From: Bugula neritina
Taxonomy: Eukaryota > Animalia > Bryozoa
NCBI GenBank assembly: GCA_964035545.1
Contig: CAXIUT010000119.1
Coordinates: forward strand, 1-37,980
Reading direction: 5' to 3'
DNA length: 37,980 bases
The first letter of the stretch is position 1; every line of letters starts with the position of its first letter. The notes beneath the pieces are model-generated. The model was not told the origin of the DNA. It searched no databases and saw only the letters and a program-made list of their open reading frames with translations. This document shows, in pieces, positions 14,061-37,727 of this stretch. The translations under genes were made by a program, and so were the position numbers.

Positions 14061-14739
14061 ATGAGGGGGTTGGGGTTGGGGTTGGGGTTGGGGTTGGGGT
14101 TGGGGTTGGGGTTGGGGTTGGGTAGGTGTCTAGATTTATTCCTTAGAAGAAGATTAATTCTCGTTTGCAGTTGTAGGTTTATGGCAGTAAGGCAGGTCCG
14201 TTGGTTTCTGAGTTGACTGATTCGAGATAGTAGTATAAATGGAAGCCTTACTTTAGGATAGAATGTAGTCGTGATGATGATTTGTAGCTGGTGCTATTTT
14301 AGGTTTAAAAATAAAAAAAAACAGAGATCGGGATGACCAATTTGGGTTGTTATGGGTTCATTAATAGATAAAAAAACTATCTCAAAATAAAGTAACTTAA
14401 CAAATGTATTTATTGTTCTATTTAGATGAGTTGCAGATCACCATGGATTACTAGTTGAAAGGGACTCTTGAATTATGGATAACTTACTAGCCTGGTTTGT
14501 TGTATGAGGGAGAGTTGGTGCAAAAGGTGGATTTAAGTTTGAGAGGATGCAAGATGGTAATGTCCAAGGGATCTAAATCAAAAGAATATCAAATAGAGAG
14601 GCAGAAGGGCGAGGTTTAGTTGTATGTGGGTAAGTGTCCCTCGTCGAATGCGTTTAGTTTTTTGGATGCAGGAGGGACTAACTTGCCATGTTCTTTTGCT
14701 GAAGACAGCTATGTTGATAAGAAGATGAGATAAATATGA
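14061..14739 (+). CDS. Hypothetical protein, possibly C2-domain-like; 5' end interrupted by the telomeric tract; 20-nt intron 14406-14425
   Basis: Frame from 14123 reads EVSRFIPEKKINSRLQLEVYG...YKWKPYFRIEC...LELVLFEVE...EIGMTNL and continues to TGA 14737-14739; ATG 14061 is not in this frame as assembled. Confidence 0.6.
14065..14122 (+). repeat. Internal telomeric tract (GGGGTT)n, ~58 nt
   Basis: Perfect hexamer array just after ATG 14061. Confidence 0.95.
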
Positions 14740-14866
14740 CAGTTATGTTATTTACGACCATTTAATCAAACAATATATCTTAATACCATCTTACCTATTT
14801 ATAGTAACTTTATGCTATTTACTATTAACTATGAGGTTTATTAACTTTATTATCATAAATAAAGAA

Positions 14867-15671
14867 ATGAATCCATAATTGCACTACCTAGATCACGTTC
14901 AGAATCGATCGTAAAGTAAGCAATGTAGTCGTTTTGGTAAGGCTGCTCGTTTTAAAGAGTCCAAATCCATGTAGCTGGTATCGTATTTAGACATACAGAA
15001 TTCGCATATCATCTATATCGACCAAAACAGACAAGATCTTGTGGATTTGGATTTGGATAAAGGTCATCTCTTTCGAAAAATAACCATAATCCTGCTCCCA
15101 ATTAGTATGATCTCAAAAAAAGTAATAAAGGAATGGGATCTAAAATGGGATTGAGTAGAGATTCTGTTTGTTTTGGATCTATTGCCGTTGAAATACAAAA
15201 CCAAATCCTCAATCCAGCTCCAGGAACTTATTAAATGCCATCTTCACACAGATCTAATAGATTTACTTTAAGAAAAAGACTTGACTCTGAGAGGATGATT
15301 GGTCGAGGACCTGGACCAGGAGAGTACGAGTTGGTTACTATGAATGAAAGAGGAAACTATCCTGTTTCTCAGTTCAAAAATACAAGGTACATCATTTTGG
15401 ATCAATCAAGGACAGAACACAGTCATAGCTAGAAATATCCTGGTCCTGGTTCTTGTAATTCAATAATAATGAAGATAATATAAGTAGGAGTAATATATTT
15501 AATTTCGAGAAGAGATGGAGAAATATGAAGAGTCGTACTTTTGGGACTAGTACGAGGAAAGGTCCAGTGAGTGAGGCAAGAATGCTGGTGCCTGGTCCGG
15601 GAAAGTATGAAAGCTTTTCTCCTTTTGGCGAAAAAAATCTGGATAATATTAGAGTGAAAACTGAATGTTGA
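14867..15671 (+). CDS. Sperm-tail PG-rich (STPG/SHIPPO) repeat axonemal protein; 20-nt introns 14971-14990 and 15455-15474
   Basis: Repeated PAPNEYD, PAPGTYE, GPGPGEYE, YPGPGSY and VPGPGKYE motifs. Confidence 0.85.
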
Positions 15672-15753
15672 ATTATCTATCTTTAATACTTCTAGAATCT
15701 TAATACTTTATTATGTTATTGATAATTAGAATATTCTATAAGACAGTTAATCG

Positions 15754-16452
15754 ATGAAGGACAGAGTTAGCAATTAGTCAGGAGGCGGATAGTTCAAGAT
15801 AAAGGTTTGTCTGCCGAGTCCTCCTTGTCTGTCATGTGACACATAGAAAACTATTGAAGCTTCACCGCACTTTAATTCTTAAAGGTTGAGTAAAAGATAG
15901 AGTGTTGCTAGTAGTATGCCTGAAGAGGATGGAAAGGCTAGGCTCAAACTGAGAGATTATCTTTTTCAAGCAGCTACTTCATCTAGTAAGAATGCCTAGA
16001 AGAGAAAGATTATGTAAAATTTACCTTTGAATACGTGTAAAACAATGTCTTTTTCTAAACCAAACGATAAACCAAAATAAAATAAGAAATCTGATTTTCG
16101 TAAGCATAAATATGAGATAAATAACTTGGAAATGTACAATGTTTTAGAGCAGTAGCTTCAGTGTGATCTTTCTTAGAGTATTAACGAGTTGTAGAGGATT
16201 CAGGAGTATTTATAAAGCAATGGGCGGAAGAACGAGGTACCTAGTGGAGAGAAAATGATTGTTATGTACAATTTGAGAACAATAGTAAAGAATAAGTTGA
16301 TTGGAAGTGTAAGGGAGATGAAAGAAGAAGTGTTTGGAAGTAAAGAAAACTTGATGGGATCTTCAGGTTTTGGAGTCAATAAAAATATGACCTATTTTGG
16401 AACTACTGGTTAGAAAACAACTAAATAATAAAACATAAATGCTACTAGATGA
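15754..16452 (+). CDS. Hypothetical protein (232 aa)
   Basis: ATG-to-TGA open frame under code 30; no recognised domain. Confidence 0.6.
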
Positions 16453-16511
16453 AAGATTGATTCTTTAATACTTTATATAAACTATTGATCTGATATTTTG
16501 ATATTTTGATA

Positions 16512-34916: not shown

Positions 34917-34963
34917 TAATTGTGTTAAATATTATCATCCAAAAGTTTATTTATATTTTATTT

Positions 34964-35134
34964 GAGATACTACATTACATTGTTAAGCATAATATTAATC
35001 ATGAGTGTTTAAGGCAATGAGAGATATTACATTACATTTTTAAGCATAATATTAATCATGAGTGTTTAAGTCAATGAGAGATATTACATTACATTGTTAA
35101 GCATAATATTAATCATGAGTGTTTAAGTCAATGA
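34964..35134. repeat. 57-bp tandem repeat x3, each copy containing an in-frame ATG of the next gene
   Basis: Units start at 34964, 35021 and 35078; few substitutions between copies. Confidence 0.92.
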
Positions 35135-37580
35135 GGAGGAGAGTATGTTTTTTGGGTCTGTGATAGACATAACTTTAATAGTAACTGCTGTCGTTTCTTC
35201 TCTAAGTACACTCTATTTGATTTAGTTTCTTTGACTATTCCTTTTCTCTATTACATGAAAAAAGAATGCAGATAGCATCCAACTGTTTTGATAGCTAATA
35301 TTTCTCTACTCTAAGCAACAGCTAATTTTAATGTTATTCTTATGGCTTATAACATGTATGATTTTTAACACTGGCTCGACATAAAAACTGTCTTTCATTT
35401 CCTTACCTTTAATCTTGACATACTACCGACTTACGATGACTTCTGCTTATCTAATTATTGTATTTATATGTTTTTTTAACTCGTATCAATAAGTTTTCAT
35501 ATCTGTTATTCAATTGATCTCTTCATCACTTTAAAGTATCCTTTTTACTCAGGAAAAAAAAGAAGAAAAATATACTACCTCTTCTCAATCATTTTCCCTA
35601 TTATCACAATTGCTAACTCTATTCAATAGGCTTAAAGTAAATTTTAATTAAAATAGATATCTGTAATACTCTTTAAAAATAGTCTGTTTATTATATTCCG
35701 TATTTTATTTATTTATTTAGACTTTGGTTTTTGATTACTTTAATGATTTTTGCTGCTGTTTCGATAGTAATTATCGTTGTAAGTTTTTTTGCAAAAAAAA
35801 GTCAATCATAAATAAGAAAATCATATATAAAGCAGCATCGAATGACCCTTATGATACTTGTTTTATTGTGGATATGTCCTATCTGGGCAAATATTAAAAT
35901 CCATCTTTTTTAAGAAGATAATTCTCAGTTTTAAGTGATTAATACAATGGCATTTTTTACAATCGTGAGTTCAAGTGGAGTTATTGTAATTGTGAGAATT
36001 ATATTCGATTCTTATCTCAGAAAAAGAGTATGTTTTTAGTAGTATAGATATTGGCTATCTTTAAATCTGAACAGTCTAAAAGATCAATAGGTATTTCTAG
36101 CAGCTAGAGTTATATTGAATTAAGCAAAAAAGGAAGTGTGAATGAGTAAATCTGGAATTTACCTCTTTCTGGAGCAATGAACTAATTTCAGAGCCAAGAA
36201 GTAGTGCATAATATAATTCAAGTGGTGTGTTAGGCTTGTTCTCATAGAAGGTAAGGAGACAGACAAAGTATTTTTAGAAATTCAACCACAACAGAAAATA
36301 TACTTTACTAATCTATTTATAGGAATACAGTGCATATTGAAAGAGAGTCCTAAACTATAGATTAAAGCTTTTTAGATTTACTTCTTCATGAACGAAGATA
36401 ATAAAAAATATTGGGGAAAGATCCTATAGAATGTGACCTTAATTAACTTAAATAGCTTTGTAAAAGAAATAAAAAATTTAATATGATCTGTACTTGTCAT
36501 TCTAAAACCTATAACGATGAAACGATGAGATTAAAACAAAAAACGGTCAAAATAAAAAGCAGTACTTTAAAAATGAGCGAAGTAGAAGATTTCTAAGAAA
36601 TAAGTACTCTAGATATCAAAGTTTGTTCATACTCTCATAGAATATTTTAAAGTCTTAGAACAGAGAATGCATTTAATTAAGAACAAATATAAAAATCTTT
36701 AGATCTTTAAAAAAATATAATACAAATAAAGAAAGCTAAGTAGTCTTTGGGAGCTAGTGGAAGTTTTTTCTTTTTTAGTTTTGACAATATTTTAGTAATA
36801 AAGACAATTTCTTAAGAAGAGAAAGATAAAATGATAGAAATTCTTCCTAAGTATTACTAGCATTTAAAATATAACCAAAAGAGTTTATTAGCAAAAGTAT
36901 TAGGATTATTTTCAGTTGAGATATCTTAAATATCAAAGATATATTTTTTGATGATGTAAAATACACTAAAATATTTTAAAAATAATCATGTTGACTTTAA
37001 CTGTTATGATTTGAAAGGTTCTACAATCCAAAGATAAGTAAAAGATTCCAATGCTGCAATATTTAAAGATATAAATTACTATAGATCATCTGATTGTTTC
37101 ATTTATATGACAAAGTAAAATAAGATCAGGTTTATAGATATTATATCGAAAGATCTATAGATGTTAAAACAATTCAATATTATGGACTATTCTCTTTTAT
37201 TAGCTGTTGGAAAGTCTAAATCAAAAAAAAAATCAAAAAATCATTTAGATCTATCAAAAATTAAATTCATCTAAAATTACAAATATATTCAATAACTCTA
37301 AACTATTACCAAAAAATTATATTGTGTAGGAGTTATTGATTTCCTTCAAGAATTTAATATCTCGAAAAAATTAGAACTTTGGCTTAAAAAAATATTCAAA
37401 GGAGGAGGAGATATTTCAAGTGTTGGAACATAAATATATTTCCAAAGATTCATTTATTTTATTAAAAGAATTATTGTTACCTTTAATATTCCTTCAGTCA
37501 AAAAGACTTCGTTGACCTCTTCTGTCAAATCGATCAAAAATTAATAAAAATAAATATATAGCAATAATAAAAGCAAATGA
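35115..37580 (+). CDS. GPCR-like 7TM domain fused to a phosphatidylinositol-phosphate kinase (GPCR-PIPK); tiny introns incl. 35206-35225, 35637-35656, 35700-35720, 36028-36047
   Basis: N-half has TM helices with REHP and ICYSIDLFITLKYPF. C-half has GASGSFFFFSFD, IKTISEEE, SLLAKVLGLF, YDLKGS, IMDYSLLL, GVIDFLQEF, KKLE. Start could be 35001, 35058, 35115 or 35145. Confidence 0.88.
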
Positions 37581-37647
37581 TCTCACAATCATAATATCAT
37601 TATTTAAAATAAATAAAAAAAGTATAAATATTAAATTAAAAAATAAA

Positions 37648-37727
37648 GGGTTGGGGTTGGGGTTGGGGTTGGGGTTGGGGTTGGGGTTGGGGTTGGGGTT
37701 GGGGTTGGGGTTGGGGTTGGGGTTGGG
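37648..37727 (+). repeat. Subterminal telomeric tract (GGGGTT)n, 80 nt
   Basis: Perfect array separated from the terminal telomere by 173 nt of unique AT-rich DNA. Confidence 0.96.

What the first reader, a model, noticed from the sequence alone, without database searches (positions are those of the whole stretch)
14061..37727. Four internal telomeric tracts, all in one orientation, three at the 5' end of + strand genes
Seen: perfect (GGGGTT)n tracts of 58-93 nt at 14065, 27247, 29786 and 37648. All are G-rich on the + strand, like the right telomere, and all begin and end in GGG. None has the head-to-head inversion expected from end-to-end fusion. Three start within about 40 nt after an ATG (14061, 27245, 29746). 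Inference, three options: (a) telomerase acts at developmental breaks that are then re-ligated, leaving telomeric inserts in genes; (b) alternative right-end telomere-addition sites at G-rich seeds produce a nested chromosome set of ~14, 27, 30, 37.7 and 38 kb that the consensus merged; (c) a native GGGTTGGG seed expanded in place. Options (a) and (b) would be a genome-processing mode I do not recognise as described for this group. An unexpanded GGGTTGGG at 19961-19968, in a minus-strand gene, serves as an internal control.
Basis: partly seen in the sequence, partly recalled or inferred. Interest (0 to 1): 0.85.

Follow-up and report, generated by a model that had tools for sequence, protein, structure and literature searches.

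The report
Telomere tracts stitched in by assembler
The four "internal telomeres" are in the assembled sequence, but they are most likely the ends of shorter versions of this ciliate mini-chromosome that the assembler pasted over an equal length of true sequence, so they mark ordinary alternative chromosome ends and not a new way of processing the genome.

Summary
The window is a whole ciliate macronuclear chromosome (C4A2 at 1-100, G4T2 at 37901-37980). It carries four perfect internal G4T2 tracts at 14066-14122, 27247-27339, 29786-29854 and 37648-37727.

The tracts are very probably not internal in real molecules.
1. Contigs from two public runs of one other study cross tract 3 with exactly the window's spacing (84 letters). 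A 31-mer graph contig cannot hold a 69-nt pure hexamer repeat.
2. No indexed run holds more than one of three sampled words across the tract-to-right-flank junction.
3. Genome-wide, 233 of 264 such tract ends lie on the arbitrary + strand of their contig.
4. The tracts end in ...TTGGG, as contig termini do.
5. The side next to the telomere start looks subtelomeric (78-81% AT, non-coding). The far side is average sequence, and genes there are cut off at the tract edge.

Best reading (confidence 0.8): reads from shorter chromosome isoforms, ending at alternative telomere-addition sites 56-118 nt beyond gene ends, were stitched into the contig in register and overwrote true sequence. Other first-stage readers noted the same pattern on other contigs of this genome. 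Interest is low.

The parts
1..100 (-). Left terminal telomere, (CCCCAA)n. It starts CCCAACCCC and has two irregular repeats.
13321..13983 (-). Minus-strand ORF with positive coding score. Its first ATG is at 13947, which is 118 nt from tract 1.
14066..14122 (+). Tract 1: 57 nt of perfect G4T2 ending TTGGG|T. The left junction is read as an alternative telomere-addition site. The right junction is read as an assembly join. Not tested with reads.
   Evidence: interpretation by analogy with tract 3 and the genome-wide statistics
26625..27176 (+). 3' part of a + strand gene ending in TGA at 27174-27176, 70 nt before tract 2.
27247..27339 (+). Tract 2: 93 nt of perfect G4T2 ending TTGGGG|A. Contigs of runs X1 and X2 both run 47 letters past 27239. 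That is more than a 31-mer graph can hold of a pure hexamer repeat.
27339..27470 (+). Perfect 53-nt tandem repeat, 2.5 copies, directly after tract 2. Reads of X1-X3 hold variant copies that the assembly lacks, and the repeat occurs nowhere else in the assembly.
29013..29729 (+). + strand ORF with positive coding score ending in TGA at 29727-29729, 56 nt before tract 3.
29786..29854 (+). Tract 3: 69 nt of perfect G4T2 ending TTGGG|C. Independent contigs (X2 record 15, X3 record 21) cross 29779-29862 with exactly 84 letters, so non-repetitive sequence of the same length lies here in those reads.
29746..31563 (+). FG-GAP repeat gene. Its ATG and 13 hydrophobic codons lie left of tract 3. The coding frame resumes at the tract's right edge, so codons 14-36 are masked by the tract.
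35292..37580 (+). Last gene of the chromosome, with PIP-kinase-like motifs judged by eye. Its TGA is at 37578-37580, 67 nt before tract 4.
37648..37727 (+). Tract 4: 80 nt of perfect G4T2 ending TTGGG|T, 173 nt inside the terminal telomere. It is a second addition site in the terminal addition region. Not tested with reads.
37901..37980 (+). Right terminal telomere, (GGGGTT)n, ending GGGGTTGGG.

Best explanation
The window is one macronuclear mini-chromosome of a ciliate. In the sequenced cells some copies are shorter and end in a normal telomere at about 14.07, 27.25, 29.79 or 37.65 kb. These are alternative telomere-addition sites lying 56-118 nt beyond a gene end. Other copies run through those sites. 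The long-read assembler tolerated the short unaligned telomere at the end of such a read. It emitted the read whole and continued with the next read at the coordinate where the first one stopped. The telomere (57-93 nt) therefore overwrites an equal length of true sequence. It shows up as a one-sided internal tract whose far end is the last base of a real molecule (...TTGGG). Because contig emission is directional, nearly all such tracts in the assembly are G-rich on the contig's + strand. Shown: the same-length non-repetitive sequence in other reads at tract 3, the strand bias, the end phase, and the flank asymmetry with cut genes. Inferred: the assembler step itself, its extension to tracts 1, 2 and 4, and that reads ending in telomere at these sites exist.
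For: (1): X2 record 15 (2681 nt, depth 8.7) and X3 record 21 (1362 nt, depth 112) each align to both sides of tract 3. Exactly 84 record letters lie between 29778 and 29863, equal to the 84 window letters. The same contig sets break at the 24-nt and 53-nt tandem repeats nearby. Contigs built from 31-mers cannot contain a 69-nt pure hexamer repeat, so those letters are not the tract (basis: how de Bruijn contigs work). X1 record 8 also runs 81 letters past 29778.
(2): for the 60-nt right junction of tract 3, no run holds more than 1 of 3 sampled words. X1-X3 hold 95-97% of the neighbouring words but are not among the holders.
(3): tract ends followed by A or C number 233 on the contig + strand and 31 on the - strand, spread over contigs numbered C10 to C315.
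(4) Same calls: 208 ends are TTGGG, 38 TTGGGG (about the number expected from GGG plus a genomic G), 14 TTGG and 4 TT. Contig termini have the same phase: six of six right ends, and left ends start CCCAACCCC in four of five contigs.
(5) sampled tracts: median length is 75 nt, like the terminal telomeres. The proximal flank is 78-81% AT in its first 60 nt and non-coding in 75 of 93. The distal flank is 69% AT from its first base and coding in 40 of 93. In 30 of those 40 the gene is cut at the tract edge (no ATG within 20 codons, or no TGA within 40).
(6): reads hold variant copies of the 53-nt repeat that have no place in the assembly.
(7) Alternative telomere-addition sites at which a minority of reads end are published for Blepharisma (PMC9942806).
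Against: Only tract 3 has read-level evidence, and that comes as assembled contigs whose letters inside the masked stretch the tool did not show. The junction search rests on three sampled words. The runs that cross tract 3 may be a different culture from the one assembled, although they are identical over the 2.4 kb laid. The assembler and its settings are unknown, so the stitching step is inference. 31 tracts have the opposite orientation, so the directional rule is not absolute. Depth in X2 and X3 shows no clear step at tracts 2 and 3, so short isoforms are at most a minority in those samples.
Confidence: 0.8

Rival explanations
1. Same class of artefact by another route. At each site the shorter isoform is so much more abundant that a majority-vote consensus or polishing step wrote the telomere of the many short reads over the true sequence of the few long reads.
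For: It would also give an in-register replacement of telomere length and perfect repeats. X1 has no depth to the right of tract 3.
Against: A majority vote has no reason to favour the contig + strand 233 to 31. It would not give a sharply phase-locked ...TTGGG end when telomere lengths vary between reads. X2 and X3 show no depth step at tracts 2 and 3. X1 sits at the depth threshold (about 2), so its drop-out is uninformative.
Confidence: 0.1
2. The tracts are physically internal. A developmental or accidental break was healed by telomerase and the capped end was then joined to downstream DNA.
For: The tracts are in the deposited sequence, perfect and of telomere length. Their far end has the phase of a finished telomere, as a captured end would.
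Against: Contigs from another study cross tract 3 with non-repetitive sequence of exactly the same length, and the junction words are found in no run. A biological insertion would add length and would not replace an equal length. Biology cannot know the contig's + strand. Genes at the far edge are cut, and their missing part is not found on the other side.
Confidence: 0.04
3. The contig is a false concatenation of four or five independent small chromosomes, so the segments are not neighbours in any molecule.
For: Other records of this assembly are joined telomere-200 N-telomere (L024, L042, L050), so joining of chromosomes does occur in this assembly.
Against: Independent contigs run continuously across tract 3. 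No C4A2 left telomere follows any tract. The FG-GAP gene's start and body lie on opposite sides of tract 3 in the same frame.
Confidence: 0.04
4. A native GGGTTGGG-like seed expanded in place by replication slippage.
For: The repeats are perfect.
Against: Slippage does not explain the fixed ...TTGGG end, the telomere-like length, the strand bias, the AT-rich flank on one side only, or the equal-length replacement.
Confidence: 0.02

Closest known systems
Alternative telomere-addition sites (ATAS) and minichromosomal isoforms of ciliate macronuclei, as described for Blepharisma stoltei (PMC9942806)
   Same: Telomere-bearing molecules end at internal positions of longer assembled chromosomes while other molecules read through. 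There are many sites per genome and the molecules are small and gene-dense.
   Different: Here the telomere repeat is G4T2. The sites were seen only indirectly, as telomere pieces embedded in the contig. In Blepharisma they were called from mapped reads and are not part of the consensus. Usage frequency per site is unknown here.
Heterogeneous telomere-addition regions and alternative fragmentation in Paramecium, and alternative fragmentation in Oxytricha and Stylonychia (PMC3558436, PMC6937825, PMC13076228; Paramecium details from my own knowledge)
   Same: Several addition sites lie within a few hundred nt of a chromosome end (tract 4 versus the terminal telomere, 253 nt apart). Longer and shorter isoforms share sequence.
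   Different: Paramecium telomeres mix G4T2 with G3T3, and these are pure G4T2. The spirotrichs use G4T4. The organism here is not identified.
Interstitial telomeric sequences left by chromosome fusion or telomerase-mediated break repair
   Same: A run of telomere repeats flanked on both sides by unique DNA in the assembled sequence.
   Different: Fusion leaves head-to-head arrays, and none is present. True interstitial tracts are present in single molecules and add length. Here independent reads cross tract 3 with same-length non-repeat sequence.
Overhang tolerance in string-graph long-read assembly (miniasm-type rules, from my own knowledge of the algorithm)
   Same: An unaligned read end shorter than the allowed overhang is ignored when the overlap is made. 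The read is still emitted from its first base, which replaces the neighbour's sequence in register and in one direction only.
   Different: The assembler used for this genome is not known to me, so this comparison is about mechanism and is not a demonstrated cause.

Membership tests
Physically interstitial telomeric tract | Single molecules contain left flank, tract and right flank | tested here: not met
   Tested for tract 3 only. X2 and X3 contigs cross it with 84 non-repetitive letters, and the right-junction words are absent from all indexed runs (3 words). Tracts 1, 2 and 4 were not tested with reads.
Physically interstitial telomeric tract | Orientation is independent of the arbitrary strand of the assembled contig | tested here: not met
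   233 ends lie on the + strand and 31 on the - strand.
Head-to-head telomere fusion | G-rich array abutting a C-rich array | tested here: not met
   No C4A2 run follows any of the four tracts.
Alternative telomere-addition site (ATAS) / chromosome isoform | Telomere repeats in natural end polarity joined to unique sequence inside a longer chromosome | tested here: met
   All four tracts qualify. The proximal flank is AT-rich and non-coding like a subtelomere.
Alternative telomere-addition site (ATAS) / chromosome isoform | Other molecules read through the site without telomere | tested here: met
   Tract 3 in X2 and X3, and probably in X1. For tract 2 the evidence is suggestive only (47 letters past 27239 in X1 and X2).
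Alternative telomere-addition site (ATAS) / chromosome isoform | Reads that terminate in telomere at the site | not testable with these tools
   Only assembled contigs of public runs were available. They cannot show molecule ends, and repeat positions were masked.
Assembly overhang-stitch artefact | The tract replaces an equal length of true sequence | tested here: met
   Tract 3: 84 letters against 84. Genome-wide, 30 of 40 genes at the distal edge are cut and the AT-rich half-spacer is missing on that side.
Assembly overhang-stitch artefact | The far end of the tract is a read or molecule end with the same phase as contig termini | tested here: met
   208 of 264 ends are TTGGG, plus 38 TTGGGG explained by a following genomic G. 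Contig termini end ...GGGGTTGGG.
Tetrahymena-type Cbs-directed breakage | A 15-bp breakage sequence in the germline at the site | not testable with these tools
   No germline sequence is held. The locus has a single copy in the assembly.

The most novel reading that the evidence does not exclude
In a fraction of macronuclear molecules the healed telomere really is internal, because the capped end was rejoined to downstream DNA. The assembly then happened to pick such molecules, which would make this a one-sided 'telomere scar' mode of genome processing.
Probability: 0.04. Interest if true: 0.8.

Novelty: not a real feature. Interest (0 to 1): 0.15.

Why it matters
The main value is as a warning. 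By my estimate from the counts, roughly 500 such tracts sit in this 216-Mb assembly, and at least a dozen first-stage notes on other contigs treat them as possible new biology. Each tract hides about 60-90 nt of true sequence. Genes next to them are therefore wrongly truncated or appear to carry Gly-Leu, Gly-Val or Gly-Trp repeats. In this window that affects codons 14-36 of the FG-GAP gene. On the positive side, the proximal edge of every tract is a ready-made map of alternative telomere-addition sites in a ciliate whose macronuclear architecture seems undescribed. The sites lie just beyond gene ends and usually follow an A.

Tried and rejected
1. The look-up of encoding contigs with three ORFs of the window, to fetch independent contigs and read the letters under the tracts: nothing is on record.
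2. A reading-frame test (same absolute frame on both sides when tract length is not a multiple of 3): only 5 of 96 tracts have coding sequence on both sides, and 53 of 93 lengths are multiples of 3, so it was underpowered.
3. A search of the assembly for a second (germline or allelic) copy of the tract-3 locus and of the 53-nt repeat: one copy only.
4. Identifying the organism or its genome paper: four literature searches and one atlas search gave nothing usable. A fifth literature search supplied only comparison papers on alternative fragmentation.
5. A nested set with copy-number steps: X2 and X3 depth shows no clear step. X1's zero depth right of tract 3 is at the detection threshold, so I do not count it.
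6. I considered that the contigs of X1 and X2 ending 47 nt into tract 2 show a telomere-ended isoform. I rejected this as proof, because 40 nt of pure hexamer repeat would already exceed what a 31-mer graph contig can hold. A hidden continuation of the 53-nt repeat starting near 27257 fits as well.
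Full report
WHAT THE WINDOW IS. The window is contig C128 of a 216-Mb, 321-record assembly. It starts with (CCCCAA)n at 1-100 and ends with (GGGGTT)n at 37901-37980. With the standard code it has no open frame of 200 codons. With TAA and TAG read as sense codons it is full of recognisable genes. 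Pfam confirms a malate dehydrogenase N-terminus, an acyltransferase-3 domain and FG-GAP repeats on stop-free pieces. It is therefore a complete macronuclear mini-chromosome of a ciliate with G4T2 telomeres, with G+C near 32%.

THE OBSERVATION. All four internal tracts exist as described and are 100% perfect: 14066-14122, 27247-27339, 29786-29854 and 37648-37727. All are G-rich on the + strand. None is followed by a C-rich array.

GENE CONTEXT. A codon log-odds model trained on long frames of this genome scores about +6 per 210 nt in true frames and negative values in the others. With it, tracts 2, 3 and 4 begin 70, 56 and 67 nt after the TGA of an upstream + strand ORF. Tract 1 lies 118 nt upstream of the first ATG of a minus-strand ORF. 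So the sites lie just beyond gene ends, where a chromosome end would be expected. They are not at the 5' ends of + strand genes as a rule. Only at tract 3 is the nearby ATG (29746) plausibly a real start. It opens 13 hydrophobic codons, and the same frame resumes as FG-GAP coding sequence at the tract's right edge.

READ-LEVEL EVIDENCE. The stretch between tracts 2 and 3 is held at 95-97% of sampled words by runs of two studies, and at lower share (0.41 and below) by runs of a third. Only assembled contigs of these runs could be laid, and only one call was allowed. I laid 25600-31400, which covers tracts 2 and 3.

At tract 3, contig X2 record 15 aligns to 28931-29778 with its letters 2-849 and to 29863-31400 with its letters 934-2471. 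Contig X3 record 21 does the same (letters 522-1362 and 1-437). In both, exactly 84 contig letters correspond to the 84 window letters 29779-29862. The tool masked that stretch and does not show the letters. These contigs come from a 31-mer graph, in which a word can occur only once per contig, and a 69-nt pure hexamer repeat has only six distinct 31-mers. The same contig sets do break at the 24-nt repeat (28852-28967) and the 53-nt repeat (27339-27470). The 84 letters are therefore non-repetitive sequence of the same length as the tract region.

X1, from another study, runs 81 letters past 29778, which is again too far for a pure repeat. A second run search used the 60 nt whose 31-mers all span the right junction of tract 3. 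It found no run with more than one of three sampled words, and X1-X3 were not among the holders. That search is weak alone but consistent. At tract 2 the contigs of X1 and X2 both stop 47 letters past 27239, which does not discriminate. A continuation of the 53-nt array starting near 27257 would fit that break point, which is 30 nt earlier than the contig end, and would give four copies in all. The reads also hold variant copies of the 53-nt unit (one with 3 differences in 66 nt). These have no home in the assembly, where the unit occurs only here.

GENOME-WIDE PATTERN. Other small contigs show the same arrangement. I counted tract ends followed by A or C on both strands of the whole assembly.
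- ...TTGGG: 187 forward, 21 reverse.
- ...TTGGGG: 30 forward, 8 reverse.
- ...TTGG: 13 forward, 1 reverse.
- ...TT: 3 forward, 1 reverse.

Two things follow. First, 233 of 264 ends (88%) lie on the + strand of their contig, over contigs numbered C10 to C315. The + strand of a contig is an arbitrary product of the assembler, so a biological process cannot produce this bias. A directional step in contig construction can. Second, the far end of the tracts is phase-locked to ...TTGGG. The 38 TTGGGG cases are about what a following genomic G would give. This is the phase of true contig termini: six of six right ends seen end GGGGTTGGG, and left ends start CCCAACCCC in four of the five contigs seen, with C15 starting one base later. 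The far end of a tract thus looks like the last base of a molecule.

FLANKS OF 93 SAMPLED TRACTS (80 loci fetched, plus the window).
- Median tract length is 75 nt (range 35-133), like the terminal telomeres.
- The base before the tract is A in 60 of 93.
- The proximal flank, which continues into the telomere in natural polarity, is 78-81% A+T in its first 60 nt and falls to the genome average by 90-150 nt. It is non-coding in 75 of 93.
- The distal flank is at the average (69%) from its first base and coding in 40 of 93.
- Of those 40 genes, 20 of the 29 that point away from the tract have no in-frame ATG in the first 20 codons, while the stretch before the first ATG scores as coding.
- 10 of the 11 that point toward the tract have no TGA within 40 codons.
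- The missing gene part is not on the other side: coding sequence on the same strand on both sides occurs in only 5 cases.

A simple insertion into an intergenic spacer would leave both sides AT-rich and the genes intact. An in-register overwrite of 60-90 nt gives what is seen.

MECHANISM. Some molecules of this chromosome end at alternative telomere-addition sites while others run through. A read from a short molecule overlaps reads from long molecules except for its last 57-93 nt of telomere. If the overlap rule tolerates such an overhang, and the contig is written by emitting one read whole and continuing with the next at the matching coordinate, the telomere replaces true sequence of equal length, in one direction only. 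The first half is inferred from the tracts' polarity, length, end phase and subtelomere-like flank. Such sites are published for Blepharisma, where a minority of reads end at tens of thousands of internal positions (PMC9942806). The second half is my inference from how string-graph assemblers treat overhangs. The assembler used here is unknown. The 31 tracts of opposite orientation, some in records that contain 200-N joins, show that the rule is not absolute.

RIVALS. A majority-vote overwrite by abundant short isoforms would not give the strand bias, and X2 and X3 show no depth step. Real interstitial tracts are contradicted at tract 3 by the crossing contigs and cannot explain the strand bias or the cut genes. 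False concatenation of separate chromosomes is contradicted by the crossing contigs and by the absence of C4A2 partners. Expansion in place explains none of the regularities.

LIMITS. Tracts 1 and 4 have no read evidence, and I extend the conclusion to them by analogy. The letters under tract 3 were not shown to me. Reads ending in telomere at the sites were not seen directly. Whether the isoforms form a nested set sharing the left end is untested. The organism was not identified.

VERDICT. The interpretation as a new genome-processing mode is not supported. The tracts are best read as an assembly artefact that marks ordinary alternative chromosome ends. Several first-stage notes on other contigs of this genome describe the same thing. 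One of them (s1-435074) had already suggested the overwrite, and I tested that here.

Noticed in passing
window 2599-2601 (malate dehydrogenase), 31917-31919 and 31890-31892 (flavin amine oxidase): In-frame TAG sits where cytosolic malate dehydrogenases have the Glu of GMERKDLL. It also sits where flavin amine oxidases have the Glu of the ...VLEARDR.GGR motif, and TAA/TAG align with Glu near the MDH C-terminus. If TAA/TAG are read as Glu, Glu is 8.2% and Gln 3.0% of 5090 codons. If read as Gln, Gln is 7.5% and Glu 3.7%. This hints at the peritrich code (TAA/TAG = Glu) in place of the Tetrahymena/Paramecium code. The motif comparison is from memory and was not made with an alignment tool.
   Followed up: partly
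window 2492-2511: A 20-nt GT...AG intron (GTATTTATTCCGATATTAAG) restores the malate dehydrogenase frame, so introns in this organism can be tiny.
   Followed up: partly
L024 2540-2921 (G000:C63), L042 1171-1541 (C21), L050 1137-1485 (C66): Some records of the assembly are scaffolds in which two telomere-capped chromosomes are joined head to head: G4T2 tract, 200 N, C4A2 tract. The larger 'contigs' are therefore chains of macronuclear chromosomes.
   Followed up: no
window 18126-18283, 19609-19806, 27339-27470, 34964-35135: Four perfect or near-perfect tandem repeats with long units: 20 nt x 7.9 at 100%, 66 nt x 3 at 96%, 53 nt x 2.5 at 100%, and 57 nt x 3 at 96%. Copy number may be under-represented in the assembly, as the reads suggest for the 53-nt array.
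   Followed up: partly
93 sampled tracts in L002-L081: On the proximal (true) side, 10 of 93 sites have a coding frame running into the telomere with no TGA in the last 40 codons. Some alternative telomere-addition sites therefore truncate genes instead of lying between them.
   Followed up: no
L018, L022, L025, L038, L062, L081 and window 37648-37980: Many chromosome ends carry a second embedded tract 30-1030 nt inside the terminal telomere. Telomere addition at ends is thus spread over a region and is not confined to one nucleotide.
   Followed up: partly
window 25-29 and 37943-37947: The terminal telomeres contain single irregular repeats (CCCCC, and GGGTT without the fourth G). The four internal tracts are flawless.
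   Followed up: no
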